This document shows positions 16,461 to 47,768 of a stretch of DNA of 64,000 bases, piece after piece (position 1 is the first letter of the stretch; every line of letters starts with the position of its first letter). A program made the position numbers and the translations under genes. Source of the DNA: Isurus oxyrinchus (Eukaryota); contig JANJGN010000052.1 in NCBI GenBank assembly GCA_026770705.1, positions 1,984,001 through 2,048,000 on the forward strand, given 5' to 3'. The notes under the pieces were generated by a model. It was given only the letters and a program-made list of their open reading frames with translations. It was not told where the DNA came from and searched no databases.

Positions 16461-16519
16461 TTTGAGTCTAGTGGATCCACAAGCCATCCAGAGATAAATA
16501 TTGAGATTTCTCTCCCCAG

Positions 16520-19654: not shown

Positions 19655-19942
19655 ATAAACCCACGATATTCCCTGCTGAAATTATTGCAGGAAAGCGTGT
19701 GGATGTAAGCTGCACCTTCAACACAACGTGCAATGGAACAGCAGCACCTGTCTTAACCTGGGACACTCCCACTGACGTACCTGGATCAGTCTCAAACACT
19801 GTAACTCAGCATGGTGTCACTCTGACCTATACTTCTGTTCTGACCCTGATCCCATCACTCAAACACCACGGACACAATCTCAGCTGCAGAGTGAGATATC
19901 CATCTGTTTCATCGGAGCGGACCCTCATTCTAACTGTGCAAG
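19655..19942 (+). CDS. Gene A first C2-set exon (Siglec domain-2 type)
   Basis: 288 nt phase 1-1: DKPTIFPAEIIAGKRVDVSCTFNTTCNGTAAPVLTW...SVLTLIPSLKHHGHNLSCRVRYP...LTVQ; extra Cys six residues after the B-strand Cys; donor caag|gtaag. Confidence 0.88.
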
Positions 19943-20265
19943 GTAAGAACGGACACCCTTCATTCTACATCAGCACTCCCTCAGCGCTGACCCTCTGACA
20001 GTGCAGCCCGTTCTCAGTGTCCACATTCTCATGCCTCTCAAAGTGCTTCACAGTCGATAGAAGTTAACTGATCTTTATTTGATTGTTGCTGAATGAAGAG
20101 ACAAGCTGTCTAAACTTTACATCTCACACACATTATTTTCCATGGCAACACCTCCTCCAATCAGAGACCACTTGCTGATTAACCAGCACTCTCTTCCCTT
20201 TAAATATAAATTGTTGTTCACTTTCTGTTGGTAAACCTGCAATCTGCCTTGTTGAGTCCGGTCCT

Positions 20266-21671: not shown

Positions 21672-24249
21672 AGCTTTGTACAGCAACAATCTGGTCAGTC
21701 AGTGCGGACAAATAACGTGTGATGTTGTGTTAAGTTGTAATGAAACTGGTCAGTGTCCTGGTTAGAATCATCTCCGTATCATCGAGTCATTCCAGCAATG
21801 GAGGAGGACATTTGGCCCATTGAGTCTATGCTGTCTCTCTGTAAAGCAATCCACTCAGTCCCATCCCCCGCTCTATCCCCGTATCCCTGCAAATTTATTT
21901 CCAATTTCCGTCCAATTTCCTTTTGAAATTGTTCATCGAATAGGAATGAACAGAAATGTGACGTCGCTAAACTCTGTTCTCTGATTGGAATGAGCTTTCT
22001 GAATGCTGCACCTTTTTCATGCTGCGATAGATTGTAAGAAGCATTTGGCTTATGAATAAAATTACATTGATTAACTCAAGTGATTAAAATGCTCAGCCTG
22101 TTCTGTAGATATTTAAAGATTAAAATTCTTGTTTTGCTGCAAAATACTTGGCTCAAAGACATAGCTTCCTGTTGTCACGTTTTCCAATCAGATGAATTCC
22201 TCTGTCCATCTTTATAATAGAAATTTCCAATGTAAACATGTCACATTGTAACTGCACACACTTGCCAGTGGCTGGTGTGATACCAAAGCTGTCTTGCTGC
22301 AGAGAAACAGCGAGAAATATTCCTGTTGTGTGCATGAACTTCATGTTAGCATGAGACACAGGCATCAGATGAAATTTTGTGCAATTTGTACAATGTTCTT
22401 TAGACAGCACAGCACTCCCTCAGTTCAAACCCTCCAACAGCGCAGCACTCCCTCAGATCAGACCCTCCGACAGTGCAGCACTTCCTCAGTTCAAACCCTC
22501 CGACAGTGCAGCTCTCCCTCAGTTCATACCCTCCGACAGTGCAGCACTCCCTCAGTTCAAACCCTCCGACAGTGCAGCACTCCCTCATTTCAGAGCCTCC
22601 GACAGTGCAGCACTCCCTCAGTTCAGAGCCTCCGACAGTGCAGCACTCTCTCAGTTCAGACCCTCTGACAGTGCAACACTCCCTCAGCTCAGACCCTCCG
22701 ACAGTGCAGCACTCCCTCAGTACTGAACCTCCGACAGTACCGCACTACCTCAGTTCTTCTCTGCCGATGCTGCCAGACCTGCTGAGTTTTTCCAGGTATT
22801 TCTGTTTCTGTTTTGAATTTCCAGCATCCGCAGTTTTTTTGCTTTTAGTGCTGGGCAGTTCCTCAGCAAGGATTCGGGCCACAAAACATTGCGAGTGCTG
22901 TGGGTCTGCGCCACGATTTAGAGAGCTGTGCTTGGCACGCCTATTCTAGTCCCAGTCCAGTGTGGTGGGGACAGCCTGGCAGTCCTGGGTTGGTGGTGCC
23001 CAGCATGGTGTGAATGACGTGGTCAGTCGCTCACACACGTCGGTCCTGGGGGTGGGTGGCTTGATACTAGGCCGCAGGTGGCACAATCCCAGTCAGGGGA
23101 GGCATCTGCAGCCTGTCAGTGGGGAGCAGGTAATATAGAGGGTAGGGGTGGGGGTGGAAAAGAGGGGGGCCGGTGGTCTCTGTAAGTCACAGTACAATGG
23201 GCCTCTAGTTGGAGAGAGGTCAGGTCTACATGGGGCATTGGGATGTCAACATCAGACAGTCTAGGGAGGAGGACTGGGATGTCAACCCCCAACACAATAA
23301 GATCAAGGATTAGAGAGGAAGGGAGGAGACTGATTGGAAGGAGGGGAATGTGCACATTATGCTCCTCCAGCACGATGGGAGGGACTGTGATGGTTACGGG
23401 GGTGGGGGGGGGGGGTGACGTGTGAGGGGATAGACGCTTACCTGGTGGTATTGCCTCAGCCCCACCCTTTTTCAAGCTGATCCAATGTCGCAGTTGAAGA
23501 ATAAGCTACAAAACAAATTGGCAGGGGAGGTCTCCCAGGGCCTGTGGGAGACATCACCCACTGCATCTTCGGCCTGTTTGAAGGGGCACCCGAACAATTC
23601 CGGCTTTTCCAAATGATGAGGAAGACACAGCTGCACCCCGAGTCCCCTACTGGGGATCCAGAAGGTTGCAATAGCGCTGCGAGGGACTCATGGGCTCCAC
23701 AGTGACTCCCTAATTAGCGACTGGAAGGTTTATGTTCATTTATCTTTATTATCCGTTCATATTGAGCAATGGAGCTCCTGATTTGTCACCTTCCTGTACC
23801 TCGTCCAATGCTTCTGTTATCAGGACTTCCACATCGATGTGAAAGAGCCATGATGATAGCAGACAGTCGCACAATGGGAATGGCACTAGGCCAGTGATCC
23901 AGAGGCCCAGGTGAATGCTTTGAAGGCACGGGTTCAAATCCCACCACGGCAGCTGGAGGAATTTCAATTCGATTAATCAATAAATTTAATTGATTGATAC
24001 ATTTTTTTCTTATTCATTTCAGGGATGTTGGTGTCGCTGACTAGGCCAGTATTTGTTGCCCATCCCCATTTGCCTTTGAGAACATATGGATATCTGAGTT
24101 AGGATCAGGAGTAGGTCACTCAGCCCCTCGAACCTGCTCCGCCATTCAGTAAGATCATGGCTGATCTGATTGTCACCTCAACCTCACATTCCTGCCTACC
24201 CCCAATGACCTTTCACCCCCTTGTTAATCAAGAATCTATCTAGCTCTGT

Positions 24250-26210
24250 GGAAGGGGAGCCAATCAATCGGGCTGCTTTGTCCTGGATGGTGTCAAGCTT
24301 CTTGAGTGTTGTTGGAGCTGTGCTCATCCAGGCATGTGGAGAGTATTCCATCACACTCCTGACTTGTGCGTTGTAGATGGTGGACAGGATTTGGGGAGTC
24401 AGGAGGTGAGTTACTGTCTGCAGGGTTCCCAGCCTCTGACCTGCTCTTGCAGCCACAGTGTTTATATGGCTGGTCCAGTTCAGTTTCTGCTCAATGGTAA
24501 CTCCCAGGATGTTGATATTGGGGGATTCATTGATGGTAATGCCATTGAATGCCAAGGGGCGATGGTTATGAATGGTCTGTGGGATACTCTGGTACAAAAT
24601 TTCAACACTCGGACTCCAGATGCAATATTCAAGTGGTTCCTTTATTAGGCATGTGGGGAGCAAACGCTGGGCAGTACAGGTGCTTCTCCACCGAGGTTCA
24701 AATGAGCACAGTTTATATATTTTTTACTCTCAGTTACAAGGTAATGGTATTAGTTAGACAAAGGCCACAGCACAATGATCCTCCGGTGGGCTGATAATTG
24801 TGTTCTTGTACAGTAATTACAGGGCAGAGACTGGCTATTGTCCTTTTGAGACAGCAAAGAATCTATGTTTGTTCGATACAAAAGGTTTCCGGAGGCTGAC
24901 TGGATGTGGTTCAAGGCCATCGGAGGGTGTGAAATAACCTTCCCCATTTCTTGATTGAGTCACCCTGTGTCCTTGTGTGTGTGTCTCCCATTTCCTCATT
25001 GCAAATTTACAGCTGAGCCCTTTGTACAGGTTTTTAGCTTTCACGTAAGGATGTGTACGCTTTGGCACCCTAGCTGCTGGTCCTGGCTGGCTCTTTAAAA
25101 TAAATCCAAATTTTCTGCGCCTTCAGTTAGATTCTCTCTTGTTGGAGCTGGTCATTGCCTGGCACTTGTGTGGCATGAATGTTACTTGTCACCTGTCGGC
25201 CCAAGCCTGGATGTTGTCCAGGTCTTGCTGCATTTGGACATAACTTGCTTCAGTATCTGAGGAGCCGTGAATGGTGCTGAACATTGTGCAAACATCAGCA
25301 AACATCCCCACTTCTGACCTTATGATGGAAGGAAGGTCATTGATGAAGCAGCTGAAGATAGTTGAGCCTCGGACACTACCCTGGAACTCCTGCAGTGATG
25401 TCCTGGAACTGAGATGATTGACCCCCAACAATCACAACCATCGTCCTTTGTGCTGGGTATGACTCCAAGCAGCGGAGAGTTTTCCCCCGATTCCCATTGA
25501 CTCCAGTTTTGCTCGGGCTCCTTGTTTTGCCACACTCAGTCAAATGCTGCCTTGATGTCAAGGACAGTCACTCTCACCTCACCTCTGGAGTTCAGCTCAT
25601 TTGTGCATGTTTGAACCAAGGCTGTAATGAGGCCAGGAGCTGAATGATCCTGGTGGAACACAAACTGAGCGTCAGTGAGCAGGTTCTTGGTAAGCAGGTG
25701 CTGCTTGCAAGCGCTGTTGATGACCCCTTCCATCACTTTAGTAATGATCAAGAATAGACTGCTGGGGAATTGGCTGGGTTGGATTTGTCCTGCTTTTTGT
25801 GTACAGGACGTACCCCATAGCCGGGTAGTTGCCAGTGTTGCAGCGGTACTAGAAAATTCCAGAAAAGCTTGGCTAGGGGCGCAGCAAGTTCTGGAGCACA
25901 AGTCTTCAGTACTATTGCCGGAATAATGTCAGGGTCTGGAGCATTTGCAATATCCAGTGCCTTCAGCCCTTTCTTGATATCACGTGGAATTAATCGAATT
26001 GGCTAAAGATTGGCATCTGTGATGCTGGGGACCTCCGGAGGAGGCCGAGATGGATCAGCCACTCAGCACTTCTGGCTGAAGGTTGTTGCGCATGCTTCAG
26101 TCTTGTCTTTTGCACCGATGTGCTGGGCTCCTCCATCATTGAGGATGGGGATATTTGTGGAGCCTCCTCCTCCAGTGAGTTGTTTAATTGTCCATGACTG
26201 GATGTGACAT
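24250..26210 (-). mobile_element. CR1 LINE RT fragment interrupted by a solo LTR
   Basis: LDIKAAFD, FSCFINDLP...MFAD, YNAQVRSVMEY motifs. Confidence 0.85.
24569..25125 (-). mobile_element. Retroviral-type solo LTR (557 bp)
   Basis: Termini TGAA...TTCA, perfect 4-bp TSD GTTA (24565-24568 and 25126-25129) splitting CR1 sequence; minus-strand AATAAA at 24641-24646. Confidence 0.8.
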
Positions 26211-28069
26211 CTGGAATGCGAAGCTAGTCTCAGTAATGGTGACCATGAAACTAAGGCCAATTGTTGCAAAAACCCATCTGGGTCACTAATGCCCTTTGGG
26301 GAAGGAAACCTGCCGTCCTTACCCATTCTGGCCTACGTGTGACTCCTGACCCACAGCAATGTGGTTGACTCTTAACTGGCCCCTGAAATGGCCGAGCAAG
26401 CCACTGAGTTATATCAAAACCCGCCACAGACCAGTCAAACCAGGTGAACTGCAGCACTTCGAAAAGGCAGCTCAGCACCCCCTTCTCAAGGGGTCAGTCA
26501 GGAACAGGTAACAAACGCTGTCCACATCCCGTGAAAGAATTTTGGTAAAAAGGTAGCCGTGTATCACCACCCACGGCCAGCGCCAACCCCCCCACCCCTA
26601 CCTGATTGCACCAGTTTCAGATTATACCAGGTCAATGAACGGATAGAAACCCAAACCAATGAGATGAGCACAGAGAAGGATCAAGCCAGAGAGAGTTGGT
26701 GGGAAGAATTGGGAAAGCAACAAAAAAGGCAGAGCGGACACTAACACTATAACAAAGTAAAGACCAGAGGAGGAAGGAAGCAAGTGTGAAGAGGAATTGA
26801 GAGTAGAGCTGGTAGGCTGCTTGTCGAAGCCAAGGACCCTCCATAGGTCTCACCCACAGTGCTGTTGGGGAGGGAGATACATGATTTTGACCCAGGATCA
26901 TCAAGTTTTGCACTGGCAGAGCCTTTAAAGAAAAGGGACCTTTACTACCCGTGTCCCCTGCCCAACAAAGCTGTTGACATGCCGAGTCCACCTGTACAGG
27001 CAACCTCCAGACAGTTGACTACAAAGGCCATTGCAGCTGCTGAATATGACTTCCAGTTTCAAAACCTTCATGAATACAAGGATGGGGGATTCAGCAGGAA
27101 TATTCCTGCACATCCTGTGGCAGATCCTGTAAATAAAAGGGACCTTCACTCACTCCTCAAAGCTGCTGACCTGCTGATTCACATCTACAGGCAACCTCCA
27201 AACAGTCGACTAGAGAAGACAATGCAGCTGCTGAATGTGACTCCTAGTTTCAAACCCTTCACACTGGAAAGAAGGAATCCAGAGCAATGGGCCTCACTAT
27301 GATACTTGACAGAAACTGATTTTAACTCTCATCTCTAAGTATTATTTTTCCTTTGCTTACATTTTAATCCCTGCACCTGATGGCTTTATCGCTTCAACTT
27401 AAATAACTTTCAGCAGGAGCCAGGTTCAAATTGAATGGACAAGCAGGCTTGGGGGGCCAAAAGGCCTACTCCTGCTTCTGTTTATTTATGTTTGTGTTGT
27501 TATGTAGTGGAACTAGAGAGGTTATAGCAGTTATGAGAGCATTAAGCAAACAGCAGCAAGAATTGAACACCTACGTTGTGGTTTATGAAAAGGTTTTCAA
27601 CCTGGTCAACTGGTAAAATCTGTTGAAAGTGGGCTATCATGGCGTGTGCCCTTTGTGTGATATTTGTAACAACGTTCTCGATGTCGGAACAGCTTGCATT
27701 GAACAAAGCTGATCTTTACCCAGAACTTCAGAGGAAGGGGGGACAATTGTTCCCTGGTGTGGGGGGCATGGTTGGGGGGGAGGGTGAGGGAGAGACAAGT
27801 AGCCTGAAATACCAAGCCAGACACTTTGTGAAGACAGAAGTTGTTTATTCATTTCTTTTTTACAAATCATAATCTTTACAATTAAAGTCCCGACAAGATA
27901 ATGGTGAATAATGAACACATTGTCGGGGTGAATCTGTGCCCGGGAGCATAAAGCAGCAAAATCAGGAGCCCGCTTTACATCTCTCTGAATTTTAACTATC
28001 ATTAACCCCAGTAACATCCATTCAAATGACTTAGTCATAAGATTCCTCACACATTCACTTGCACACTCA

Positions 28070-28580
28070 CACACCCACACCCACACAGACACACTGACAC
28101 ACTCACTCATTCACATTGACACACACTGACACAGTCACACACACCCACACAGACACACTGACACACTCACTCATTCACATTGACACACACTGACACAGTC
28201 ACACACACCCACACAGACACACTGACACACTCACTCATTCACATTGACACACACTGACACAGTCACACACACCCACACAGACACACTGACACACTCACTC
28301 ATTCACATTGACACACACTGACACAGTCACACACACCCACACAGACACACTGACACACTCACTCATTCACATTGACACACACTGACACAGTCACACACAC
28401 CCACACAGACACACTGACACACTCACTCATTCACATTGACACACACTGACACAGTCACACACACCCACACAGACACACTGACACACTCACTCATTCACAT
28501 TGACACACACTGACAGTCACACACACCCACACAGACACACTGACACACTCACTCATTTACATTGACACACACATATTGAC
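28070..28580. repeat. 64-bp CA-rich minisatellite, about 8 copies, in the probable hepcidin 3' UTR
   Basis: ccacacagac anchor at 28081, 28145, 28209 and onward; first minus-strand AATAAA I found downstream of the stop is at 27844-27849. Confidence 0.9.
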
Positions 28581-28932
28581 AGTCACACACACACACACAC
28601 ACGCTCATAAAGACAGACACAAACACAGTCACGTGAGGTGAATAGTGTCGATGTATTTAAGGGGAAGCTGGATAAACACACGAGGGAGAAATGAATAGAA
28701 GGATATGGTGATGGGGTGAGATGGAGAAGGGGTGGGCGGAGACTCGTGTGGAGCAGAAACACCAGCATGGAGCAGATGGGCCGAATGGCTTCTTTCCCTG
28801 CTGTAAAACGCAGGTAAAGTTTCAGTTGGAATTAATGAACAGGGCCTGTGTGAAATAGATTGCTAAGCAATGATAAGGAGGGGAGAGGCTGTGGCATGGT
28901 GCAGGATGACCTTGCGTGAATGAGGCCAGGGT

Positions 28933-29043
28933 CTAATATCTACAGCAGAGACCACAAGTCTCATTTGATTCTCTCGAATTACAGCAGTTACAGCAGAATC
29001 TGCAGAATCTGCCCATTCTCTTCTGGCGCTGCAGCAAGGAGCC
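28933..29043 (-). CDS. HAMP: Hepcidin exon 3: GSLLQRQKR | MGRFCRFCCNCCNSRESNETCGLCCRY*
   Basis: Acceptor tcctgcttttccag, phase 0, 111 nt; furin site RQKR followed by the 8-Cys C-x2-CC-x-CC-xn-C-G-x-CC hepcidin signature. Confidence 0.93.
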   Translation of the reverse strand, partial: GSLLQRQKRMGRFCRFCCNCCNSRESNETCGLCCRY

Positions 29044-31344
29044 CTGGAAAAGCAGGAGCACAATAGGTGAGAACATTCCGGAAAGAAAGAAGGCATCATT
29101 TCAATCAGGCGCGTCATTGGAAGGAGGATGGCGCATTTCTATAGCGCCTTTCCCCTCCTCAGGATGGCCCAAAGTGTTCCACAGCTGAAGGAAGGACTTT
29201 TTCTGAAGTGGGCTCACCGCTGTAATGTAGGAAACGCAGCAGGCAATTCACGCACAGCAAGATCCCACAAACAGAAATGTGATAATGGCCCCGATTTTCA
29301 GTTTTTTACCAATGTCAGTTGAGGGATAAATGTTTGCCCCAGGAAAGTGGACATAACTCCACCCATCCAGCCCCCACCACCCCCTCCACACATACCCCCC
29401 AACTCCTGACGCACTTCATTTAAATTGTGGCCATGGAATCCTCTATATCCACCTGAGAGGGCAGATTGGTTGCCCCAGTTTAATGTCTCATCTGAAAGAC
29501 AGCGCCTTCAACAGTGCAGCACCCCCTCAGTACTGACCCTCCGACTGTGCAGCACTCCCTCAGTACTGACTCTGACAATGCAGCACATCCTCAGTACTGA
29601 CCCTCCAACAGTGCAGCACTCCCTCAAGACTGACCCTCTGACAATGCAACACTCCCTCAGTACTGACCCTCCGACTGTGCATCCCCCCGCCGGTACTGAC
29701 CCTTCGACAGTGCAACACTCCCTCAAGACTGACCCTCTGACAATGCAGCACTCCCTCAGTACTGACCCTCTGACAATGCAGCACACCCTCAATACTGACC
29801 CTCCGATAGCTCGGTCATTCCTCAATTACGCCTGGTGGTCCTTTTAACTCAGAGCTGAGAGTCGCAGAGAATCGAGCAGACACCCTGAACTGACACTTGC
29901 AGTGCAAGTACTGGGAGTGCGCTGGTCATTATCATGCTGCTGTCTGTGGGATCTTACTGTGCGCCAATGGATGATTCTTTTCCCACATTACATCAGTGAC
30001 CTCACATGAAAGAAAAAAGCACTTGATTGTCTGCGAAACACTTTGGGACGTCCTGATGTGTTGGAAGGCGCTAGAGAAATGCAAGTCCTCTTTGTCTTTC
30101 ACTCGATCCTCTAAGGTGTCTGTTGATTAACCAGCCTCTCGGTGTTTGATGTAGGCCTGGTTATAAACAGTTAGAAGGATCAAATATCAAAAATGCTTTG
30201 GCTGACAGTCAAACCGATTGTGCATTCGGAGAGATGAGATACGGTCTGCGCACAATGACTCCAGTCTCTGGCACTGACTGCCGCCTGGGGTCTCCCTTCC
30301 ACATAACACTCACAACTTGCATTTACACAGCGCCTCTGACATTGCAAAATGTCCCAGCCCACATTACCGGAGCGTAAATCAGAGAGAAGTCTAACACTGA
30401 GTCACATATGGAGATATTAGGGATAGGTGACCAAAAGCTTGGTCAAAGATGTCAGTTTTTAAGGAGCGTCTTAAAGGAGAGAGAGAGAGAGAGGCAGAGA
30501 GGTTAAGGGAGGGTATTCCGGAGCTCAGGGCCCCAGGCAGCTGAAGGCACGGCCACCAATGGTGGAGCGATGGGAATCAGGGGGACCCGGGAGATGCAGT
30601 AATGTCAGAGATTTTGGAGGAACATCGGGACCGGAGGAGGTGTTCTCCTGCTCCATATCTCTCTCTCTCTTCCTCTCATCCACTCCTCCTCTCCCTGTCT
30701 CTCTCTCTCCTACTCTTCCGCTCAATTGCCCTCTCTCCCAATCTTTCTCTCCTCTCTCCCTTTTCCTGTCTCTCTCCCTCTCTCTCCCCTGTCTCCTTCT
30801 CCCACTCTGTATCTCTCCCTCTCTCTCACACTATTTTTGTACCTTTCGCTCACTCTGTAACTCTCCCTTTCCTGTTAATTTCTCTCTCTTGGACAATCTC
30901 TCTTCCCTTTTCACTTTCCCTCACTCTGCATCTCTTTAATTTCTCCCTCTGTCACTCTCTCCCACCTATGTTCTTTCCCTTTCACCCCTCCCCGTCCCAC
31001 TCTCTGTCTCTCTCTTCCAATCCCTCCCTCCCCCATTCCATCCCTCTCTCCGACTCTCGACTCCCAGCCTCTCGTTAACCCACTCCCAGGCTGGATCAGT
31101 CTCCCTCTCACTATTCCCGGCGTGGGTTACATTTAAAATTCCTGTGGGGATATGTTCACTTCCTTGGAATTGCCTCTTCCCAGCTTTGCAAAAAAGTTGG
31201 GCGGTGGGGGGGGCTCGATTTCAAACATGCCTCCTGAGTATAACCGAGACAGACTGCCACTGAAATCAGCTTGAAATCAGAAAACTTTCTGTGGAAGAAA
31301 CGAGCGGGGAGAAACCTTAAAATAAGGAATGAATTTCCACCTAC

Positions 31345-31401
31345 CGTGTCCGGGGAATCCACAGATTTCTCAATCGTCGAAGAACCTAAAGCAGTGTCAA
31401 C
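31345..31401 (-). CDS. HAMP: Hepcidin exon 2 (pro-region VDTALGSSTIEKSVDSPDT)
   Basis: Acceptor ttctttctttttgcag, donor ACG|gtaggt, 57 nt phase 0-0, the size expected for HAMP exon 2. Confidence 0.85.
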
Positions 31402-33207
31402 CTGCAAAAAGAAAGAATTTATCAGGGAGAAAGTGAGAGGAGGATTGAGGGAGAGGGAGAGAGAGAGAGAGAGGTACAGGAGAGAGAGGGGGAGGAGGAC
31501 AGACTTGCATTTCTCTAACGCCTTTCACCACATCCCAAAGCATTTCACAGCCACTGAAGGATGTTTTTGAAGTGCACTCACACTGTAGGAAATGTGGCAG
31601 CTGATTTGTGCACAGCAAGATCCCACAAATAGCAATGTGATCATGGCCTAGATCATCTGTTTTTGGTGATGTTGGGTGAGGGATAAATATTGGTCCCAGG
31701 ACACCGGGGAGAACACCCCCTGCTCTTCCTCCAAATAGTGGCTGTGGGATCTTTCACACCCGCCCGAGAGGGCAGACGGGGGACTCGGTTTAATGTCTCA
31801 TTCAACATTGTTGTGCTCCCTCAGTACTAACCCTTTGACACTGCAGCACTCCCTCAGTACTAACCCTTCGATAGTGCTGCACTCCCACAGTATTGTCCCT
31901 CCGTCAGTGCAGCGCTACCTCAGTACTGACCCTCCGACAGTGCAACACTTCCACAGTACTGACCCTGTAACAATGCAGCACTTCCTCAGTACTGACCTCC
32001 GACAGTATAGCACTCACTCAGTACTGTCCCTCCAATAGTGCAACACTTCCACACTACTGACCCTCTGACAGTCCAGCACTCCCTCAGCACGGAGTGTTGA
32101 CCGACGTTATGGGACTGAATTCCCTGGAGTGAGACTCAGACCAGAGATTTAGGTAGGGTTGTTCCGGCTGGAGGAGGTTACAGAGATAGGGAGGGTTGTA
32201 GAGGCTGTAGGAGGTAACAGAGATAGGGAGGGTTCTAGAGGCTGTAGGAGGTGACAGAGATAGGGAAGGTTGTAGGGGCTGTAGGAGGTTACAGAGATAG
32301 GGAGGTGAGTAGGGGCTGTAGGAGGTTAAAGAGATGGGGGGGTTGTGGGGGCTGGAGGAGGTTACAGAGGTAGGGAGGGTTGTAGAGGCTGGAGGAGGTT
32401 ACCAAAATAGATACTGTTGTAGGGGCCATAGTAGGTTACAGAGATAGGGAGAGTTATAGTGTGGAGAGGACGTTATAGAGTTCATGAGCATTGTAGGGGC
32501 TGGAGGAGGTTACAGTGATTCTGAGGGTCGTGGGGCCTGGAGGAGGTTACAGAGATAGGGAGGGTTGTAGGGCCTGGAGGAGGTTACAGAGATAGGGAGG
32601 GTTGTAGGGTCTGGAGCAGGTTACAGAGATAGGGAGGGTTGTAGGGTCTAGAGGAGGTTACAGTGATCATGAGGGTTGTGGGGCCTGGGGGAGGTTACAG
32701 AGATAGGTAGGGTTGTAGGGGCTGGAGGAGGTTACAGAGATAGGGAGGTTTATAGGGGCTGGAGGAGGTTACAGAGATAGGGAGGGTTGTAGGGGCTGGA
32801 GGAGGTTACGGAGATAGGGACAGTTGTAGGGGCTGGAGGAAGTTACAGAGATAGGGATTGCTGTAGGGGCTGGAGGAGGTTACAGATATAGGGAGGGTTG
32901 TAGCGGCTGGAGAAGGTTACAGAGATAGGGAGGGGTGTAGGGGCTGGAGGAGGTTACAGAGATAGGGAGGGTTGTAAGGCCTGGTGGAGGTTACAGAGAT
33001 AGGGAGTGGCTGAGGAGGGATTGAAAACAAGAATGAGAATTTCAGGGGAAATGACAGAAGGAAATGATGTTAAATTCATAGAGGGCGACAATATTAAAGG
33101 CACGAACATAATAATATCAAACTGCGGAAGAGACCAGTCTATCTGGGTGGTAGACGTAGCGTCATGTGCAAGAAACACCTCACCCAGAGGGACATCTCTT
33201 AGCTTAC

Positions 33208-33300
33208 CCTCGACAAGGAGAAGAAGTGACTCAGCTGCAGGGAGAGCAGCAAAGTCAGAGTGAACAAGACAAGTCGCCATTTCATCTGGGAGCTTCCCAT
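33208..33300 (-). CDS. HAMP: Hepcidin exon 1 (signal peptide MGSSQMKWRLVLFTLTLLLSLQLSHFFSLSR)
   Basis: ATG at 33300, hydrophobic core, donor AGG|gtaagc phase 0; total prepropeptide 86 aa. Confidence 0.87.
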
Positions 33301-33370
33301 CTCTGCCTGTCTCTTCTGATCTTCTGGCTCTGCTTTGATGCTTTGGTTTGTAACTAGAGGAGCTTCCTGC

Positions 33371-33583
33371 TCTTATACCTGAAACACTTGAAGGGGACAG
33401 CCGGGGGCGGGTTGCTGTGTGGTATCACACCCATTTCTGGATATTGCAGTGTCGATGTTCCCTGTCCCACTGGCCTGGGACCAGCAGTAAGGTCACTGGG
33501 ACATTGACTGTCTGGCACCGAGAACTATCAGTCCCTCCGCAACGCCCTTCACCTTGTGCAAATATGTGTTCATATTGATGCAA
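33371..33583 (-). promoter_or_regulatory. Hepcidin proximal promoter
   Basis: TATAAGA at 33377-33371, GC box near 33404, imperfect STAT-like site 33434-33443, GGCACC near 33514, C/EBP-type ttgtgcaa 33554-33561 and tgatgcaa 33576-33583. Confidence 0.55.
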
Positions 33584-33929
33584 CACAACGTAGCAAAAAC
33601 AGAGGGGCTGGTTCTTATGTCGGCAAATCAGGTGAACCGCATGCCCTCTAACCCCTTACTCCTCTCATTGCTACACTTACTATTTTACAAATTGTGTGCG
33701 TTGCTTTTATTTTGGACAAGGGGCCTCGAGGGGGAACTGATTTACGCTGAGGTTTAGGGGTTAACTGTTTACCATGTGGAGACTGTTACCAGCTTTGTTC
33801 ATGGTTTATCCAGGAACATTGAAGGGCATGAACGTTCTTGCTTTGTATGGAACAAGTTACCAACTGGGTTCAGTCATCGACTCAGACTCACATCAACATA
33901 AACTGGCTTCTGACAGGTAAGTTTCTATT

Positions 33930-34520
33930 ACATGAGGGTAGGAGGAGGCCATTTGGCCCCTCGAGCCTGCTCCACCATTCAATGAGATCATGGCTGATCT
34001 GCAAACTAGCCCCATATGGCTTTGTCCCATCTCCTTTAATACCTTTGGATAACAAAAATCTATCAGTCTCACAGGTTTAAAATGAACAACTTGATCGTGC
34101 ATCAGTTCCTGTTTGGGGAAGAGAGTTCCAAATTTCTCCCACCCTTTGTACTTCCTAATTTAATTCCTTTTTAGGCTCTGACCCCGAGTCCCAGACTCCC
34201 CCCAACCAGGGGAAATGGTTTCTCTTTATCGCCCCCGATCTGTTCCCCTTATTATCATGCGAACTTTCATCAAATCTCCTGCTTAACATTCTAACTTCCA
34301 GGGAATACAAGCCGAGTTTGTGTTTAATCTCTCCTTGTGATTTAACCCTTGGAGTCCCGGTCTCATTCTGGTAAACTGACACTGCTCTCCCTCCGAGGTC
34401 AATATATCCTTCCTAAGGTGTGGGGCCCAGAATGTCTCACAGTGACTCCAGGTGTGGTCTAGCCAGGGCTTTATGTAGACTGAAGCATGACCTCTGCCCC
34501 CTTATATTCTAATCCGTGAG
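33930..34520 (-). mobile_element. Degenerate CR1 3' fragment
   Basis: LGLYSLE and LEYKGAEVMLQ motifs, CR1-like tail. Confidence 0.7.
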
Positions 34521-36619
34521 ATAGAAAGGGCAGAGTTCCAGAATTGTTGTGTTTATTCGACAACAGAATAACAGAGGAAGGTTTCCTCTCTGCCCTCTTC
34601 AGCCCCACTGGGAAGGTCAGGATGAGAAGGTTGGGCTGGGTCCCCTGTACTGGACACTCGCTGAATCTTCCAATGATAGTTCTGGGCTGGATTTCAAAAC
34701 GCATAGACAAGGATTCAGTGTTCCATCACATTCTGCCTTTGTCTCTTTTCCTCTCATTCTCTTTCTCTACCATCCTCTCTCTCTATCTATCTATCTTTCT
34801 CCTCATTCTCTCCTGCTTCATCTCTATCACTTTCTTTCTACTTCTTTGTGTGTCTCTGTCTGTCTCTCTCTCTCACTCTTTCTTTCCTTGTCCTTATCTC
34901 TTTCAGTGTCTCCCTCTTTCTCTCTCTCTCTCTCTCTCTCTAAATGTGACCCTCTCTAACAGTTTGGCCCAGTACTCTTATTTCCCTGTTTTACTGGTGT
35001 TCCATTTGAAGGTATACAAGACCAGATCAGACCAGAATGTTTATTTTCCAGTATTTACTGTGTTTTTTTCATTCTGGGTGTCTCTCGACTCTGTCTGTCC
35101 CTCTCTGTCCTTTTATTTCATTCTTTCATGTGATGTGGACATCACTGCCTAGGCCAGCATTTATTGCCCAACCCTAATTGCCCTTGTTCAGAGGCCACTT
35201 TTTAAAAGTGAACCACATTGCTGTGGGTCTGGAGTCACATGTAGGCCAGACCAGGTAAGGACAGCAGATTTCCCTCCCTAAAGGGCATTTGTGACCCTAA
35301 TACAAGAATCAGCAATGGTTTCCTGGTCATCATCGGACTTTTAATTCCAGGTTTTTATTGAATTGAAATTCCACCAACTGCTGTGGTGAGATTCTAACCA
35401 GGGTCCCAGGAGCATTACACTGGGTCTCTGGATTACTGGTCCAGCGAAAATACCATCAGGCCCCCTCCTCCCCACTCTTCCCTTCCACCATCTTTCACAA
35501 TCGCTCTCTCTCTCTCTCACTCTCCTTCTCTCTTCCCCCTCTCTCAGTCTCTGTCTGTCTCTCAATCTCTCTATCGTTCTCTATCTCCTGGAGGCTCTCT
35601 CTCTGACTGTCTCCCTCCCTATATCTGTAACCTCCTCTCTCTGTCCCTTTCCTCCAGCCCCTACAACCCTCCCTATCTCTGTAACCTCCACCTGCCCCTA
35701 CAATCCTCCCCATCTCTGTAACCTCCTCCACCTCCCACAACCCTCCCTATATCTGTAACCTCCTCCACAAGCCCATACAATCCTCCCTATCCCTGTAACA
35801 ACCTCCAGCCCGACAACACCCCTATACATGTCACCTCCTCTAGCCACTGTAACCCTAATAATCTCCCAAGCCTCCACCAGCCTTGACAATCCTGCCCATC
35901 TCTGTAACATCCTCCAACCACCACAACCCTCCCTATTTCTGTAATCTCTTCCAGTCCCTACAACCCTCCCTATCTCTACAACCTGCTCCACCCCCTGCAA
36001 CTCGCCCTATCTCTGTGTCATCCTCCAGCCCCTACAACCCTCCCTATACCTGTAACCTCCTCCAGCCCCTACAACCCTCCCTATCTCTGGAACAGCTTCC
36101 AGCACCTACAACCCTCCCTATCTCTGTAACCTCCTCCAGCCCCTACAACACTCCTTATCTCTGTAACCTCCTCCAGCCCCTACAACCCTCCCTATCTCTG
36201 TAACCTCCTCCAGCCCCTGTAACCCTCCCCATCTCTTGAAGGGTTCTCAAAATTTCCAACTGTCAAGGAACCCTGGGTTGGTGAGCGTGACCCCTGACCT
36301 CTCCTAGTGCAATTTAGTTAGGGTTTGGGGGTGGGACAAGGGTAAGGGCATTAGTAGCGTGATTCTCCCTCGGTATGCCGTGTGTTCCCCATTCTTAACT
36401 CAGTGTACTTTGTAAGTCTGTATAATCTCAGTGTCATCCTAATGTTAGAAGTTCATTTGTGACTTCAGTAAACTCAGTTTTTGTCTTGCACCAAAACCAG
36501 TTGTCTGCTGCACTTTGTGACAAGCCCCGAATAAGTCCAAGGTCTAGAACCCAGGGAGTGGGAGCGATTCAGACGGCTCAGAAGTCGCAGGTGAAGCTGA
36601 CACACACCACCACACCCTA

Positions 36620-36945
36620 CAAGGGGCTGAATGGCCTCCTCCTGTTCCTGTGTAATGGGCTTCAGTGGCTGAATGGCCTCCTCCTGTTCCTGTATAACGG
36701 ACATAAGTGGCAGAATGGCCTCCTCCTGTTTCTGTGTAACAGTCTTGAGGGGGCTGAATGGCCTCCTCCTGTTCCTGTGTAACAGTCTCGAGGGGGCTGA
36801 ATGGGCCTCTTCTGGTTCCTGTGTAACAGGCTCGAGGGGACTGAATGGCCTCCTCCTGTTCCTGTGTAACAGGCTTGAGGGGGCTGAATGGCCTCCTCCT
36901 GTTCCTGTGTAACAGGCTCAAGGGGCTGAATGGCCTCCTTCTGCT
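36620..36945. repeat. 42-43-bp minisatellite derived from a CR1 3' tail (ggggctgaatggcctcctcctgttcctgtgtaacaggctcga)
   Basis: About 7 tandem copies. Confidence 0.85.
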
Positions 36946-37245
36946 CTGTAAACTTGTTGTGATACTGTAACTGCCTCTTTGGTTTCATTCAGCTGAATCT
37001 TCAGCTCTTCAGTCTCTTCCTTGTATCTCTTGCCTTCCTCCTGGAACATTGGACATGGTTGGGTCTTCCCTGCCAACTGTTTCTTCAGTTTGCTCAGAGC
37101 GGCACAGAATTCGCTTTCTTTCTCTTCAGGATTTTCCAGTGGAACCAACTCTGACCTGAGGGACACTTGCAGCCGGTGAGGATGCTTCAATTCTTCAAAC
37201 TCATTCCGAGATACACTCTCATATTCCCCCAGCAACTCAGCAACT
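36945..37245 (-). pseudogene. Coiled-coil host-gene fragment, UACA/RAI14/ANKRD24-like
   Basis: AELLGEY...VPLENPEEKESEFCAALSKLKKQLAGKTQ...EEGKRYKEETEELK resembles the UACA-family coiled coil (recognised from memory, not searched). Confidence 0.5.
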
Positions 37246-37249
37246 CCTC

Positions 37250-38310
37250 CAGTGAAACATTTCAGAGCAGCTGAGCTTGGTTTTCTGGAACCAGTCTCGG
37301 CCCAGAAGACTAGGGCCCTCACCTGTCGCTATGATCACTGGAAGCTGGGCTGTCTGCTGCCTGTAGGACACAGGTACTGGGATGAGGTCCTTTCCCTGTA
37401 TGGATTCTCCAGTGTGTGTCTTCAGCTGATCCATTGTTGGCTCTAAATTCAGCGTCTGGGTTCCTTCATTTAGCTGTTTAAATGTGGGCTCTTCCACCAC
37501 TGTGTCTGAGGCTCCCGTATCTGCCCCATTACTAGTGGCTGCCCATTCACTTGGGTTGTGATGGTTATAGGTTCAGTTTTTACCACTGTGACATTGGACA
37601 GGGAATAGACATCGGTATCAGCAGCTTCAGGCTCTGTGATATTATTCACTTCCATCATGTTGGTGCACTGCCTGATGGGCTGTCTCGATTTCACCCTGCA
37701 TTGCTTTATTACCCGCCCCTTTCTTGTGGCAGTGATGGCATTCTGCCCCCTTGAACCTGCAGGTGTCCAGTACGTGCTCAATGCCCCCCACATCGAGAAC
37801 AGGCCAACTTCGGAGTTGCTGCTGAAATACTCCCACGAAGCCTTTTAGTTTCTGGAGCGGCAGAGACTGTCTCTCGCTTGGCGGCTGTCTCTCTCTCTCT
37901 CTCTCTCTCCAGTTTGAGCCTCACGCCCGGTGGTTGGTTCCTGTCCCAGCTGAGGACTGGTGCCATGTTGTACATCCTGTAAATCCCGCCAGTCTCTCCC
38001 AGCACTTTCCATGCCTGGCGCTATTTCCATGGTGCGCTTCAAATCGATGTCGGCTTCTGCGAGTAAACGGCTCTGAATGGCGTTGGGGTGAACGACACAA
38101 ACCAATCGGCCCCGCAACATGTCATTGAGTGTGTCTCCGAGGTCCCAGTGCTCAGTCACCTGCTTCCACTTCACTGTATAGGTTGCGATGGACTCTCCCG
38201 GGGCCCTTACTCTGGAGTTAAACTTAAACCTTTTCATTATTACCCACGGCTTCAGCTGAAAATACATCTTCATGAGGTCGACTAATTGGTGAAAAGATTT
38301 AGAATTGGGT
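37250..38310 (-). mobile_element. Gypsy gag-protease fragment
   Basis: RFKFNSRVRAPGESIATY...NDMLRGRLV, CSRCGG/CHHCHKKG knuckles, EGPSLLGRDW. Confidence 0.85.
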
Positions 38311-38600
38311 GTAATACACGTCACTGTCTTCAGCTCTGAGACTGTCAATCCTCACCAAACAATTCTTCCCTTCCAAGTCGGCGATTATTTTAGCACGTCC
38401 CACGAATGTGGCCACCCCATAATTGGGATCTTTGGTGTATGTGATGGTATATTTCCATCTATACCAATATTTATACCAAGCTCCGTGCAGTGCTGTGTAA
38501 GAGTGGGAAGGCAAGTCAAAGCTACACGGAATAACCACACAAGAGCTGCTGATAGCCCTCCGAGGTAGCGCCTTCATAGACCATCCCTCTGACGTCACTC
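38311..38600 (-). pseudogene. Gene C MAG/sialoadhesin-like V-set exon, truncated in the F strand by fusion to Gypsy gag
   Basis: Acceptor tgcctttcag, SSCVVIPCSF...W...KNCL...EDSDVYY, then gag sequence (TPNSKSF) and a stop; essential Arg and donor are lost. Confidence 0.85.
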
Positions 38601-38634
38601 CTGAAAGGCAACAAGGGAGGGGACTGAACATCAA

Positions 38635-42330: not shown

Positions 42331-45300
42331 CTCTCTCTCTCTCAGACACTCTCATTCTCTCTCTCTCAAACATTTACCATCTCTCTCTATCTTTCTCTTC
42401 TGCTGTCTCCCTCTTTCTCACTCTCATGCACTCTCTCCCTCACACACACAGAATCTCCCTCACACACACACCCTCCCTCACACACACACGCACTCTCTCT
42501 GATACGCACAATCTCTCCCTCACACACACACACACTCTCTCTGATACGCACAATCTCTCTCACACACACACACTCTGTCCCTCACACACACATCCTCCCT
42601 CACACACACACACACTCTCTCTGATACGCACAATCTCTCCCTCACACACACATACTCTCCCTCACACACACACACTCTCTCCCTCACACACACACACACT
42701 CTCTCTGATACGCACAATCTCTCCCTCACACACACACAATCTCTCCCNNNNNNNNNNNNNNNNNNNNNNNNNNNNNNNNNNNNNNNNNNNNNNNNNNNNN
42801 NNNNNNNNNNNNNNNNNNNNNNNNNNNNNNNNNNNNNNNNNNNNNNNNNNNNNNNNNNNNNNNNNNNNNNNNNNNNNNNNNNNNNNNNNNNNNNNNNNNN
42901 NNNNNNNNNNNNNNNNNACACTCTCTCCCTCACACACACAGAATCTCTCTCACACACACACACTCTCCCTCACACACACATCCTCCCTCACACACACGCA
43001 CACTCTCTCTGATATGCACAATCTCTCCCTCACACACACACACACTCTCCCTCACACATGTACACACTCTTTCTAATTCTTTTTCTCTCTCACAGACTCT
43101 CTCTGTCTCTCTCGCTCTCTCTCTCTCTCAGACACACTCTCTCTAATACGGAAGGTTGTGGTTTTAAGACGTGCTCATGATTTCTGCTCAAAACCCAGGC
43201 AGATTCTCCCCAGTGAGGGAGTACTGAGGGTGTGCTGCACTGTCAGAGGGTCAGTACTGAGGGAGTGCTGCACTGTCAGAGGGTCAGTACTGAGGTAGTG
43301 CTGCGCTGTCAGAGGGTCAGTAGTGAGGGAGTGCTGCACTGTCAGAGGGTCAGTACTGAGGGAGTGCTGCACTGTCAGAGGGTCAGTACTGAGGGAGTGC
43401 TGCACTGTCAGAGGGTCAGTACTGAGGGAGTGCTGCACTGTCAGAGGGTCAGTACTGAGGGAGTGCTGCACTGTCAGAGGGTCACTAGTGAGGGAGTGCT
43501 GCACTGTCAGAGGGTCAGTACTGAGGGAGTGCTGCACTGTCAGAGGGTCAGTACTGAGGGAGTGCTGCACTGTCAGAGGGTCAGTACTGAGGGAGTGCTG
43601 CACTATCAGAGGGTCAGTACTGAGGGAGTGCTGCACTGTCAGAACTGTCGTAATTCAGATGATGTTTGAAATTAGCAACATGCCTCGTGTAACATTCTAT
43701 ATCATCAGCTCAATATAAATAGATTAGTCTTGTACGTTTCACTTCACTGCAAATTGTTCATGGTTTCATTTCCTTGTTAACCAGGCTCATGTGATGACTA
43801 TTTTTAAATAATGTTTGTTATTTGGAACAAGGGGCCATGCCTGAACAGATAACTGTCGGATCAAGCAGCTGGGTTTTTTCTTGAACCTGGCTTCATTCAG
43901 ATGTTTGCTGCTGGACATGAGATCATTAATGTGTGAATGTAGAATCGGAGTCACCTCAGTGAACAGCAGCATTGGTTGAACAGCCTGATCTGCAATAAGA
44001 ACTGCTGAACACAATGTCCGTTCAGAACAGCTCGGTCCCCGATCAGAGAAACAGCCTCAGACAGAACCAACTGACGCTGGAATCCATACAATTCATCAAC
44101 GTGTTGGGAGTTAGTTTGATGTCGGAGATGGAGTGTTACTGGGAAGGAGGGAACCCGTCAGGATGAACAGCTCGATGTACGACAAGGAAAGGATGAGCTA
44201 AGAGGGGTTGGTCACGGACAGACGGAGCATGTGAAGACTCAACAAGCTAATGGCAGGTGAAGAGCTGGAAAGGTGTCTTTTCAACACAAGGTTTAGACAC
44301 AGAACTCGATGTTTGATCAGGTATTTCAAACCAGAGAAACTCTTTACAGGGTGAATGGACCTTGTCAATAATCCATCTAGCCAACCTCGCCTAGAGATTA
44401 GTCCAATATTAGACACTAAACCGAGTCCCCCGTCTGCCCTCTCGGGCGGATGTGAAAGATCCCACAACCACTATTTGGAGGAAGAGCAGGGGGGAGATCT
44501 CACACGCAGACACACACACACACACACACACACATTTTCTCTTGTTCATTCTTTTAAACACACACACTCCCTCTCAAATACACACACCCTCTCTCGCACA
44601 CTCCTTCTCTCAAACACATACACCCTCTCTCTCAAACACACACACACACACGCTCTCACGCACACGCTCTCTTACATACACGCTCTCTCTTTCACACACA
44701 CACTATCTAACACCCACAGATTCTCTCTCTTTCTTTCTCTCTCACACATAAGCTCTCTCCCTAACACAGACATTCCCTTTCTCTCACACACACTCTCTCT
44801 CTCACACAATTCAGCTACCTCACTCTCTCATGCGTACACACTCTACCTCTCTTTTGCTCTCTCACACATTTTCTCTTTCTCTCTATCCTTCTCTCTCGCA
44901 CACATACGCACTGTCACTCTCTCACACACACATTGTCTCTCTTTCTCACACACACACTCACTCTCTCTCTCTCTCTCTCCAAGACAGCAGGTTGGGGTTT
45001 TCAAACCGTCTCAAGGTTTCAGCTCAAAACCCAGATGGACTCTCCCCAGTGAGGGAGTGCTGAGGGAGTGCTGCACTGTTGGAGGGTCAATATTGAGGGA
45101 GTGCTGCACTGTCAGAGGGTCAGTACTGAGGGAGTGCTGCACTGTCAGGAGGTCAGTACTGAGGGAAACCCTGCTCTATCAAAGGGTCAGTACTGAGGCA
45201 GTGCTGAACTGTCAGAGGGTCAGTACTTAGGGAGTGCTGCACTGTCAGAGGGTCAGTACTGAGGGAGTGCTGCACTGTTGGAGGGTTAGCACTGAGGGAG

Positions 45301-47718: not shown

Positions 47719-47768
<50 letters not shown>

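What the first reader, a model, noticed from the sequence alone, without database searches (positions are those of the whole stretch)
28933..33300. Hidden hepcidin gene with an atypical, antimicrobial-type mature peptide
Seen: three phase-0 exons (93, 57, 111 nt) encode an 86-aa prepropeptide with RQKR, then MGRFCRFCCNCCNSRESNETCGLCCRY (27 aa, 8 Cys, net about +2). The ORF track shows exons 1 and 3 only in wrong frames. Known: iron-regulatory hepcidins have a His-containing N-terminus (DTHFP or QSHLS type) needed for ferroportin binding, and forms lacking it with a CRFCCNCC core are typical of acanthopterygian HAMP2 antimicrobial hepcidins. Inference: an independently derived or ancient HAMP2-like defence hepcidin in a probable chondrichthyan.
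Basis: partly seen in the sequence, partly recalled or inferred. Interest (0 to 1): 0.88.

Follow-up and report, generated by a model that had tools for sequence, protein, structure and literature searches.

The report
Expressed atypical shark hepcidin gene copy
This is a real, correctly spliced and strongly transcribed gene for a hepcidin-family peptide that lacks the part of hepcidin that binds the iron exporter and has an enlarged loop. It is probably a defence-type sister of the iron hormone, one of several copies in this probable shark genome, and no function was tested.

Summary
Three phase-0 exons on the minus strand (93, 57 and 111 nt with the stop) have GT-AG introns, a strong Kozak ATG and a TATA box. 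They encode 31 + 19 + 36 residues, including RQKR and a 27-aa, 8-Cys peptide.

Exon 3 alone hits Pfam Hepcidin at about the gathering score. Contigs of public runs carry exactly the two predicted exon junctions, with exon depth about 100 to 1000 times intron depth.

The peptide has a 4-residue N-terminus without His (MGRF) and an 8-residue loop (NSRESNET) with an N-glycosylation sequon. Known hepcidins have 4-5 loop residues.

One contig in the same sample shares the pro-region but continues SHLSICMYCC, a canonical iron-hormone-type N-terminus, so both types seem to coexist. Because that transcript is so similar in its flanks, a recent duplication within the lineage (convergence with teleost hamp2) is more likely than an ancient HAMP2.

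The gene lies between Siglec/CD22-like genes, as HAMP does in tetrapods. Earlier notes of this scan report at least ten further hepcidin copies on other DNA of this genome.

Defence function, loss of ferroportin activity and glycosylation are inferred, not shown. The taxon and the public annotation status could not be tested here.

The parts
33372..33377 (-). TATA box (TATAAG), 77 nt upstream of the ATG; implies a 5'UTR of about 45-50 nt
   Evidence: It is the only TATAWR within 700 nt upstream. No GGCGCC (BMP-RE) or TTCNNNGAA (STAT) site lies in the same 700 nt.
33208..33300 (-). Exon 1, coding part (31 codons). Signal peptide: n-region with K7 and R9, then hydrophobic core LVLFTLTLLLSL. Donor AGG|gtaagc.
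   Evidence: The joint 31401|33208 is seen in contigs of X1 and X2.
31402..33207 (-). Intron 1 (1806 nt, GT..AG). Holds a 37-nt minisatellite (32150-33006, 23 copies) and a 33-nt array (31816-32087).
31345..31401 (-). Exon 2 (19 codons, pro-region VDTALGSSTIEKSVDSPDT)
   Evidence: Both flanking joints are seen.
29044..31344 (-). Intron 2 (2301 nt, GT..AG). Holds a 33-nt array (29505-29806) and a TC-rich tract (30658-30871).
28933..29043 (-). Exon 3, coding part: end of the pro-region, furin site, mature peptide and stop (TAG 28933-28935)
   Evidence: Pfam PF06446 scores 26.8-27.5 bits.
29017..29028 (-). RQKR proprotein-convertase (furin-type) site directly before the mature peptide
   Evidence: sequence; the function of R-X-K/R-R is established knowledge
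28936..29016 (-). Mature peptide: 27 aa, 8 Cys, N-terminus MGRF without His
28957..28980 (-). Enlarged hairpin loop NSRESNET (8 residues) with sequon N-E-T. The dominant RNA variant reads NWREPNET (28976 G>C, 28968 A>G on the + strand).
28682..28932 (-). 3'UTR, minimum extent. The true end and the poly(A) signal were not determined, and there is no AATAAA in this stretch.
   Evidence: A spliced X4 contig runs from exon 2 to 28682 (table 8, record 17); sequence.

Best explanation
**What it is.** This is an intact, transcribed member of a lineage-specific, multi-copy hepcidin (HAMP) gene family. It sits inside a Siglec/CD22-like gene cluster of a probable elasmobranch.

**Shown.** The three exons are spliced together exactly as predicted, and the transcript, or a near-identical copy of it, is very abundant in some runs.

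**Inferred from the sequence and from what is known of hepcidins.**
- The 86-aa precursor enters the ER through its signal peptide.
- It folds into the four-disulfide hepcidin hairpin.
- It may be N-glycosylated at the N-E-T sequon in the enlarged loop.
- A furin-type convertase cuts it after RQKR, and it is secreted as a 27-aa, mildly cationic peptide (net +2).

**Likely function.**
- The N-terminus is two residues shorter than in iron-regulatory hepcidins and lacks the x-S/T-H motif, so it has no ATCUN site and no QSHLS/DTHFPI.
- It most likely does not regulate ferroportin. It more likely acts as a type-2-like host-defence or immunomodulatory hepcidin.
- A co-expressed paralogue with the N-terminus MSHLSICMYCC would keep the iron-hormone role.
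- The two types look like products of a recent duplication in this lineage, so this would be convergent with teleost hamp2 rather than orthologous to it.
For: **Gene model.** Exons, splice sites, Kozak context and TATA box.

**Family.** Pfam Hepcidin on exon 3 alone scores 26.8 bits, and 27.5 bits with the ORF (cut-off 27, E 4e-6). The best PDB match is bass hepcidin 1S6W: CRFCCNCC and CG.CCR. are identical, with a 3-residue insertion in the loop.

**Splicing.**
- Joints lie at 29043|31345 and 31401|33208 with CT..AC ends on the + strand, which is GT..AG on the - strand.
- 4+1 and 2+1 contigs of X1 and 9+1 and 11+1 contigs of X2 carry them.
- Exon bins have a depth of 7e4 to 8e5. Intron bins free of repeats have 1e1 to 3e3.
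- Loose ends at 29044 and 33206 read the neighbouring exon.
- Intron contigs are 99-100% identical to the window at about 0.2-0.4% of exon depth, as expected for pre-mRNA.

**Second, canonical type.** A loose end at 29014 in X2 reads, on the minus strand, R-M-SHLSICMYCC. An X1 contig matches both sides of the mature-peptide region but not the 77 nt between them.

**What separates the types.** Hamp1 (QSHLSLCRWCCNCC...) regulates ferroportin in sea bass and Hamp2 (HSSPGGCRFCCNCC...) does not (title and peptide sequences of PMC5665920).

**Synteny.** V-set and Ig_CD22 exons lie on both sides of the gene.

**Family size.** Earlier scan notes list at least ten further copies in this genome (leads, not tested here).
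Against: - No functional data exist. Net charge +2 is low for a potent membrane-active peptide, and human hepcidin-25 is itself about +2.
- Several ferroportin-contact features remain: the first Cys, an aromatic residue two positions after it, and a hydrophobic residue just before it.
- The canonical-type transcript rests on one contig in X2 plus one joint in X1. Only 30 of its letters were seen.
- The dominant RNA variant differs from the window at two loop codons. Transcription of this exact copy, rather than an allele or a twin copy, is therefore shown only weakly. At those two places the window's letters make up about 4-7% of depth in X1, and about 9% (28968) and under 0.1% (28976) in X2.
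- The runs are only guessed to be RNA.
- The AF2 single-sequence model is helical, not a hairpin. It is unreliable.
Confidence: 0.6

Rival explanations
1. It is still an iron-regulatory hepcidin, full or partial. The species' ferroportin tolerates, or has co-evolved with, the short His-less N-terminus, and the copies differ in dosage or regulation rather than in function.
For: - The transcript level is very high, as for liver HAMP.
- The Cys framework is conserved, as are the first Cys and the Phe two residues after it.
- Net charge is no higher than that of iron-type hepcidins.
- The locus is syntenic with tetrapod HAMP.
Against: - The N-terminus is two residues shorter and lacks His3. From background knowledge, N-terminally truncated human hepcidin-22 and hepcidin-20 lose ferroportin activity.
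- In sea bass the His-less Hamp2 does not regulate ferroportin (PMC5665920).
- A canonical SHLSIC-type transcript exists in the same sample.
- No BMP-RE or STAT site was found within 700 nt upstream (weak evidence).
Confidence: 0.2
2. It is a young, redundant duplicate that is drifting. It is transcribed because it inherited a strong promoter, but its peptide has no selected function of its own and is on the way to becoming a pseudogene.
For: - By earlier scan notes, other copies in this genome carry broken donor sites or are fused to Siglec exons (not tested here).
- The two differences between the window and the dominant RNA variant in the mature peptide are both amino-acid changes in the loop.
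Against: - The reading frame, all 8 Cys, the furin site, both introns' splice sites, the Kozak context and the TATA box are intact.
- The N-E-T sequon is kept in both loop variants.
Confidence: 0.15
3. It is a chance arrangement of short ORFs, not a gene.
For: The exons are short, and each is invisible in an ORF track of 60 aa or more.
Against: - Pfam gives E 4e-6.
- It is the only CCxCC motif in 64 kb.
- Contigs show exactly the predicted splice joints at very high depth.
Confidence: 0.01

Closest known systems
Teleost type-2 hepcidin (hamp2), e.g. bass hepcidin PDB 1S6W and sea bass Hamp2 HSSPGGCRFCCNCCPNMSGCGVCCRF (PMC5665920)
   Same: - The 8-Cys framework is shared.
- The CRFCCNCC core and the CG.CCR(F/Y) tail are identical.
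- There is no QSHLS or His3 motif.
- It occurs in a multi-copy family beside a canonical type.
- The three-exon precursor has a furin site.
   Different: - The loop has 8 residues (NSRESNET) against 5 (PNMSG), and it carries an N-glycosylation sequon.
- The N-terminus has 4 residues against 6.
- It is probably not orthologous. The canonical-type transcript of the same sample shares its pro-region and 3' flank, which points to a recent duplication in this lineage.
- The host is a probable cartilaginous fish.
Iron-regulatory hepcidin (human HAMP hepcidin-25, PDB 1M4F/6WBV; teleost Hamp1 QSHLSLCRWCCNCCRGNKGCGFCCKF)
   Same: - It belongs to the same Pfam family.
- The exon structure, signal peptide, pro-region and RX(K/R)R processing site are shared.
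- The Cys framework is the same.
- It lies next to Siglec (MAG/CD22-type) genes.
   Different: - There is no His at position 3, so no ATCUN or QSHLS/DTHFPI motif.
- The N-terminus is two residues shorter.
- The loop is twice as long.
- No BMP-RE or STAT site was found in the proximal 700 nt.
Other hepcidin copies of this same genome, noted earlier by this scan (e.g. s1-863544, s1-864172, s1-868540)
   Same: By those notes they are three-exon, highly transcribed, long-loop, His-less hepcidins nested in Siglec clusters.
   Different: By those notes some encode 29-aa peptides, some have a broken first donor site, and one is fused to Siglec tail exons. I could not read their sequences, so identity to this copy is unknown. 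One of them, on another piece, has the same length (4368) and may be a twin.

Membership tests
Hepcidin family (Pfam PF06446) | Profile match at or above the curated score | tested here: inconclusive
   Exon 3 alone scores 26.8 bits, and the 47-aa ORF holding it scores 27.5 bits, against a cut-off of 27 (E 4e-6 to 6e-6, profile positions 24-52 of 53). The score is borderline only because the exon is short and the loop is longer. The joined precursor was not scored.
Hepcidin family (Pfam PF06446) | Eight-Cys framework C-x2-CC-x-CC-x(4-5)-C-x2-CC | tested here: met
   All 8 Cys are in register, with spacing 2,0,1,0,8,2,0. The only departure is the 8-residue loop. The alignment to 1S6W needs a 3-residue gap there.
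Hepcidin family (Pfam PF06446) | Three-exon gene: signal peptide in exon 1, mature peptide in exon 3, RX(K/R)R site just before the mature peptide | tested here: met
   Splicing is confirmed by contigs.
Hepcidin family (Pfam PF06446) | Disulfide-stapled beta-hairpin fold | tested here: inconclusive
   The AF2 model without an alignment has two helices. Mean pLDDT is 76 for the best model and 50-62 for the other four. This is not reliable for a small disulfide-rich peptide.
Hepcidin family (Pfam PF06446) | Conserved neighbourhood (USF2-HAMP-MAG-CD22 in tetrapods, from background knowledge) | tested here: met
   Siglec-type V-set exons with Pfam Ig_CD22 and PDB hits to Siglec-5, -7 and -8, MAG and sialoadhesin lie on both sides. 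USF2 was not seen in the window.
Iron-regulatory hepcidin (HAMP / Hamp1 type) | Six-residue N-terminus before the first Cys, with His at position 3 (DTHFPI, QSHLSL) | tested here: not met
   The N-terminus after RQKR is MGRF. It has four residues and no His. Compare the Hamp1 sequence in PMC5665920.
Iron-regulatory hepcidin (HAMP / Hamp1 type) | Proximal BMP-responsive element (GGCGCC) and STAT3 site (TTCNNNGAA), as in mammalian HAMP promoters | tested here: not met
   Neither occurs within 700 nt upstream of the ATG. This carries low weight, because shark promoters are uncharacterised.
Iron-regulatory hepcidin (HAMP / Hamp1 type) | Binds ferroportin and causes its internalisation | not testable with these tools
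   This needs a peptide assay.
Teleost hamp2 clade (orthology) | Groups with acanthopterygian hamp2 in a phylogeny | not tested
   No comparator sequences could be fetched (searches were blank). Indirect evidence speaks against orthology: the canonical-type transcript of the same sample shares the pro-region and 3' flank.
Teleost hamp2 clade (orthology) | Direct antimicrobial activity | not testable with these tools
   This needs MIC assays.

The most novel reading that the evidence does not exclude
- Cartilaginous fishes evolved, independently of teleosts, a two-type hepcidin system.
- One canonical iron hormone (MSHLSIC...) coexists with a fast-evolving family of long-loop, possibly N-glycosylated, His-less hepcidins.
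- That family was co-amplified with Siglec receptor genes and is expressed at very high levels.
- A glycosylated hepcidin would be without precedent.
Probability: 0.35. Interest if true: 0.65.

Novelty: new variant of a known kind. Interest (0 to 1): 0.45.

Why it matters
Hepcidin is the master iron hormone of vertebrates. It is also the textbook case, in teleosts, of a hormone gene duplicated into antimicrobial paralogues.

A second, independent split into an iron type and a defence-like type at the base of the jawed vertebrates would have three consequences:
- It would show that this division of labour evolves repeatedly.
- It would give a natural experiment on which residues ferroportin needs.
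- It would add a new scaffold to the peptide repertoire, with a loop of double length and a glycosylation sequon.

The open literature searched here has no description of elasmobranch hepcidins beyond one mention in a nurse-shark plasma proteome (PMC9207270).

Tried and rejected
**Sequence and structure searches**
- The search for homologous proteins used a 53-aa by-reference query covering exon 3 and found no candidate.
- The search of protein representatives with exon 3 gave only a spurious 105-aa repeat protein. Short Cys-rich queries have little power against 1.8 billion proteins, so these blanks do not show novelty.
- The ESM Atlas gave no usable hit.
- The AF2 single-sequence fold gave a helical, inconsistent model, so it was not taken to fold search.
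- Rfam on 28000-34500 found nothing relevant, and in particular no iron-responsive element.

**Within the window**
- A search for a second hepcidin copy or stray hepcidin exons (blastn, tblastn, CCxCC scan) found none outside the N runs.

**Literature**
- Searches for hepcidin with shark, elasmobranch, Callorhinchus, Chiloscyllium or cartilaginous found no dedicated study.
- No paper prints the peptide motifs.

- The joined 86-aa precursor was never searched, scored or folded.
- The N runs were not filled.

**Rejected readings**
- 'The only shark hepcidin' is rejected because variant and canonical transcripts exist.
- 'CRFCCNCC marks hamp2' is rejected because Hamp1 has CRWCCNCC.
Full report
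**Observation**

- Exon 1 (33208-33300) translates to MGSSQMKWRLVLFTLTLLLSLQLSHFFSLSR.
- Exon 2 (31345-31401) translates to VDTALGSSTIEKSVDSPDT.
- Exon 3 (28933-29043) translates to GSLLQRQKRMGRFCRFCCNCCNSRESNETCGLCCRY followed by a stop.

Both introns are phase 0. The donors are AGG|gtaagc and ACG|gtaggt, and the acceptors are pyrimidine-rich (tttttgcag|G, cttttccag|G). The ATG has a strong Kozak context, gcagagATGG. A TATAAG box lies 77 nt upstream, at 33372-33377.

Exon 1 has the layout of a signal peptide, with K7 and R9 followed by the hydrophobic run LVLFTLTLLLSL.

In an ORF list of 60 aa or more, only out-of-frame ORFs cover exons 1 and 3. The true frames appear only at 20 aa. That explains 'hidden'.

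**Family**

Exon 3 alone matches Pfam Hepcidin (PF06446) at 26.8 bits. The 47-aa ORF containing it scores 27.5 bits, against a curated cut-off of 27, with E about 4e-6. It is the only CCxCC motif in all six frames of the 64-kb window.

The closest solved structure by sequence is bass hepcidin 1S6W. It aligns CRFCCNCC and CG.CCR. identically, with a three-residue gap in the loop.

The joined 86-aa precursor was never searched, scored or folded.

**Transcription and splicing**

Runs that hold the exon 3 and 3'UTR stretch were found, and four were laid on 28600-33500.
- **Joints.** Contigs of X1 and X2 (one sample of 'organism A') carry joints at 29043|31345 and 31401|33208. The skipped parts end CT..AC on the + strand, which is GT..AG on the - strand. 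These are exactly the predicted introns. Loose ends at 29044 and 33206 read into the neighbouring exon.
- **Depth.** Exon bins have summed contig depths of 7e4 to 8e5. Repeat-free intron bins have about 1e1 to 3e3.
- **Introns.** Intron contigs match the window at 99-100%, at roughly 0.2-0.4% of exon depth, as expected for pre-mRNA.
- **3'UTR.** A spliced X4 contig reaches 28682, so the 3'UTR is at least 250 nt. I found no AATAAA, and the 3' end is not determined.

Three caveats apply. The runs are only guessed to be RNA. Contig depth is a poor measure of expression. The dominant variant differs from the window at 28976 (G>C, Ser to Trp) and 28968 (A>G, Ser to Pro), so its loop reads NWREPNET instead of NSRESNET.

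At those two places the window's own letters make up about 4-7% of depth in X1. In X2 they make up about 9% at 28968 and under 0.1% at 28976. Splicing and high expression are therefore shown for this gene or a near-identical allele or twin copy. They are not strictly shown for this exact haplotype.

A low-depth contig of 'organism B' (about 4-5% divergent) also carries the Trp/Pro letters. The window's loop may therefore be the derived state.

**The peptide**

After RQKR (29017-29028) the predicted mature peptide has these properties:
- 27 aa and 8 Cys, with spacing 2,0,1,0,8,2,0
- four Arg, two Glu and no His, Lys or Asp, so net charge is +2 and pI 8.2
- one sequon, N18-E-T

I compared it with the sea bass peptides printed in PMC5665920: Hamp1 QSHLSLCRWCCNCCRGNKGCGFCCKF and Hamp2 HSSPGGCRFCCNCCPNMSGCGVCCRF. 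The core CRFCCNCC equals that of Hamp2 but differs from Hamp1 by only one residue. The core is therefore not diagnostic.

Two features do set this peptide apart.
- **N-terminus.** There are four residues (MGRF) before the first Cys, against six, and no His at position 3. That means no QSHLS/DTHFPI motif and no N-terminal x-x-His copper/nickel (ATCUN) site.
- **Loop.** It has eight residues, against five in the two sea bass peptides and four in human hepcidin. It carries a glycosylation sequon that is kept in the NWREPNET variant.

By its title, PMC5665920 reports that Hamp1 but not Hamp2 regulates ferroportin. From background knowledge, N-terminally truncated human hepcidins lose ferroportin activity.

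**Paralogues**

One search also shows transcripts that share flanks with this gene but differ in the mature peptide.
- **Canonical type.** In X2 a contig matches the window through the Met codon after RQKR (down to 29014). It then reads, on the minus strand, AGC CAC CTC TCG ATC TGC ATG TAC TGC TGT, which is SHLSICMYCC. The N-terminus would be MSHLSICMYCC, a canonical six-residue, His3 type. An X1 contig (depth 6460) matches both 29014 upward and 28936 downward but not the 77 nt between.
- **Third variant.** The X4 contig, and loose ends at 29006 and 29008 in X1 and X2, read ...QER MDRQQLCRFCC. This variant has a six-base insertion.

These are thin data. The canonical type rests on one or two contigs. 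They do fit the earlier notes of this scan, which list at least ten further hepcidin copies on other DNA of the same genome. Most of those lie in Siglec clusters, some have a broken donor site, and one is fused to Siglec exons. I could not read those loci, so I use the notes as leads only.

Paralogues that share the pro-region and 3' flank but have a replaced mature peptide point to recent duplication with rapid change of the mature part. That favours an origin within this lineage over an ancient HAMP2.

**Context**
- No second hepcidin exon lies in the window.
- On the + strand, 12722-19998 holds three Siglec-type V-set exons and a C2-set exon. They hit Pfam V-set and Ig_CD22, and in the PDB Siglec-5, -7 and -8, CD33, MAG and sialoadhesin.
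- A further V-set exon lies on the - strand at 38299-38634.
- Three near-identical Ig exons lie at 46358-49033, followed by an exon with ITIM-like motifs at 51845-52081.
- From background knowledge, HAMP lies beside MAG and CD22 in tetrapods, so the neighbourhood is conserved. USF2 was not seen.
- Within 700 nt upstream there is no GGCGCC or TTCNNNGAA site. That is weak evidence against mammalian-type BMP/STAT control.
- Rfam finds no IRE.

**Mechanism**

Shown: the three exons are spliced, and the transcript is abundant.

Inferred:
- signal-peptide cleavage
- oxidative folding into the hepcidin hairpin
- possible N-glycosylation at Asn18
- convertase cleavage after RQKR
- secretion of a 27-aa peptide that, lacking the ferroportin-binding N-terminus, acts in defence or immunomodulation rather than in iron control, while the MSHLSIC-type copy serves as the hormone

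I put this reading at about 0.6. Retained ferroportin activity gets about 0.2, and a drifting redundant copy about 0.15.

**Known and new**

Membership in the hepcidin family is well supported. Membership in the iron-regulatory type fails on its defining N-terminus. Orthology to teleost hamp2 was not tested and is unlikely.

The open literature searched holds no description of elasmobranch hepcidins, apart from hepcidin being listed among nurse-shark plasma proteins (PMC9207270). No paper prints these motifs. One earlier scan note says that shark hepcidins are already in public databases. I could not confirm or refute that (searches were blank).

I rate it a new variant of a known kind. The taxon ('shark') was not testable with the tools at hand.

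Noticed in passing
window 12722-13207, 16501-16971, 18800-19270, 19699-19998 (+): Three Siglec-type V-set exons (Pfam V-set and Ig_CD22) followed by a C2-set exon. The second and third V exons are near-identical tandem duplicates about 2.3 kb apart. Other notes of the scan already cover this stretch (s1-869988, s1-870012).
   Followed up: partly
window 46358-46780, 47430-47805, 48476-48790 (+); 51845-52081 (+): Three near-identical Ig (I-set/Ig_3) exons in tandem (…IIEGNSAVIICSVESFPASNLTWRHLNVPMNRTS…DTGDYQCVAENEHGAVEGFITITVE). Downstream lies an exon with ITIM-like motifs (LFYANINF, TEYAQIRF). This is probably an inhibitory CD22/Siglec-like receptor with exon-level duplication.
   Followed up: partly
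window 38299-38634 (-): A lone Siglec-like V-set exon on the minus strand (PDB hits to sialoadhesin, MAG and Siglec-5). It abuts a retroelement gag-like ORF (37845-38348). It may be an orphan or disrupted exon.
   Followed up: no
window 32150-33006; also about 14432-14961, 35495-36203, 63005-63419: A 37-nt minisatellite (TAGGGAGGGTTGTAGGGGCTGGAGGAGGTTACAGAGA, 23 copies in hepcidin intron 1) recurs at several places in the window. It looks like a dispersed repeat family.
   Followed up: no
window 29505-29806, 31816-32087; also about 22294-22949, 43175-43718, 45153-45422, 50946-51389, 58504-58891: Arrays of a 33-nt unit (ACAGTGCAGCACTCCCTCAGTACTGACCCTCCG) lie in both hepcidin introns and at many other places in the window. 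They give long spurious ORFs in several frames and very high contig depth in all runs.
   Followed up: no
window 28300-28627: A 64-nt CA-rich tandem repeat (4.7 copies, 96% matches) begins just downstream of the hepcidin 3'UTR. The X1 contigs diverge from the window at 28635, so the array may differ between individuals or copies.
   Followed up: no
window 33413 (upstream of the TATA box): A contig of X2 (depth about 3900, roughly 1% of exon depth) covers 33413, upstream of the predicted start site. It could reflect a minor upstream start, read-through, or DNA in the run.
   Followed up: no
window 1271-3535 (-), 24196-25901 (-), 36918-38348 (-), 53286-53708 (+): Retroelement remnants (gag/protease-like and reverse-transcriptase-like ORFs) fill much of the space between the Siglec and hepcidin genes. 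Pfam gave no hit at E 0.01 for the two ORFs tested.
   Followed up: partly
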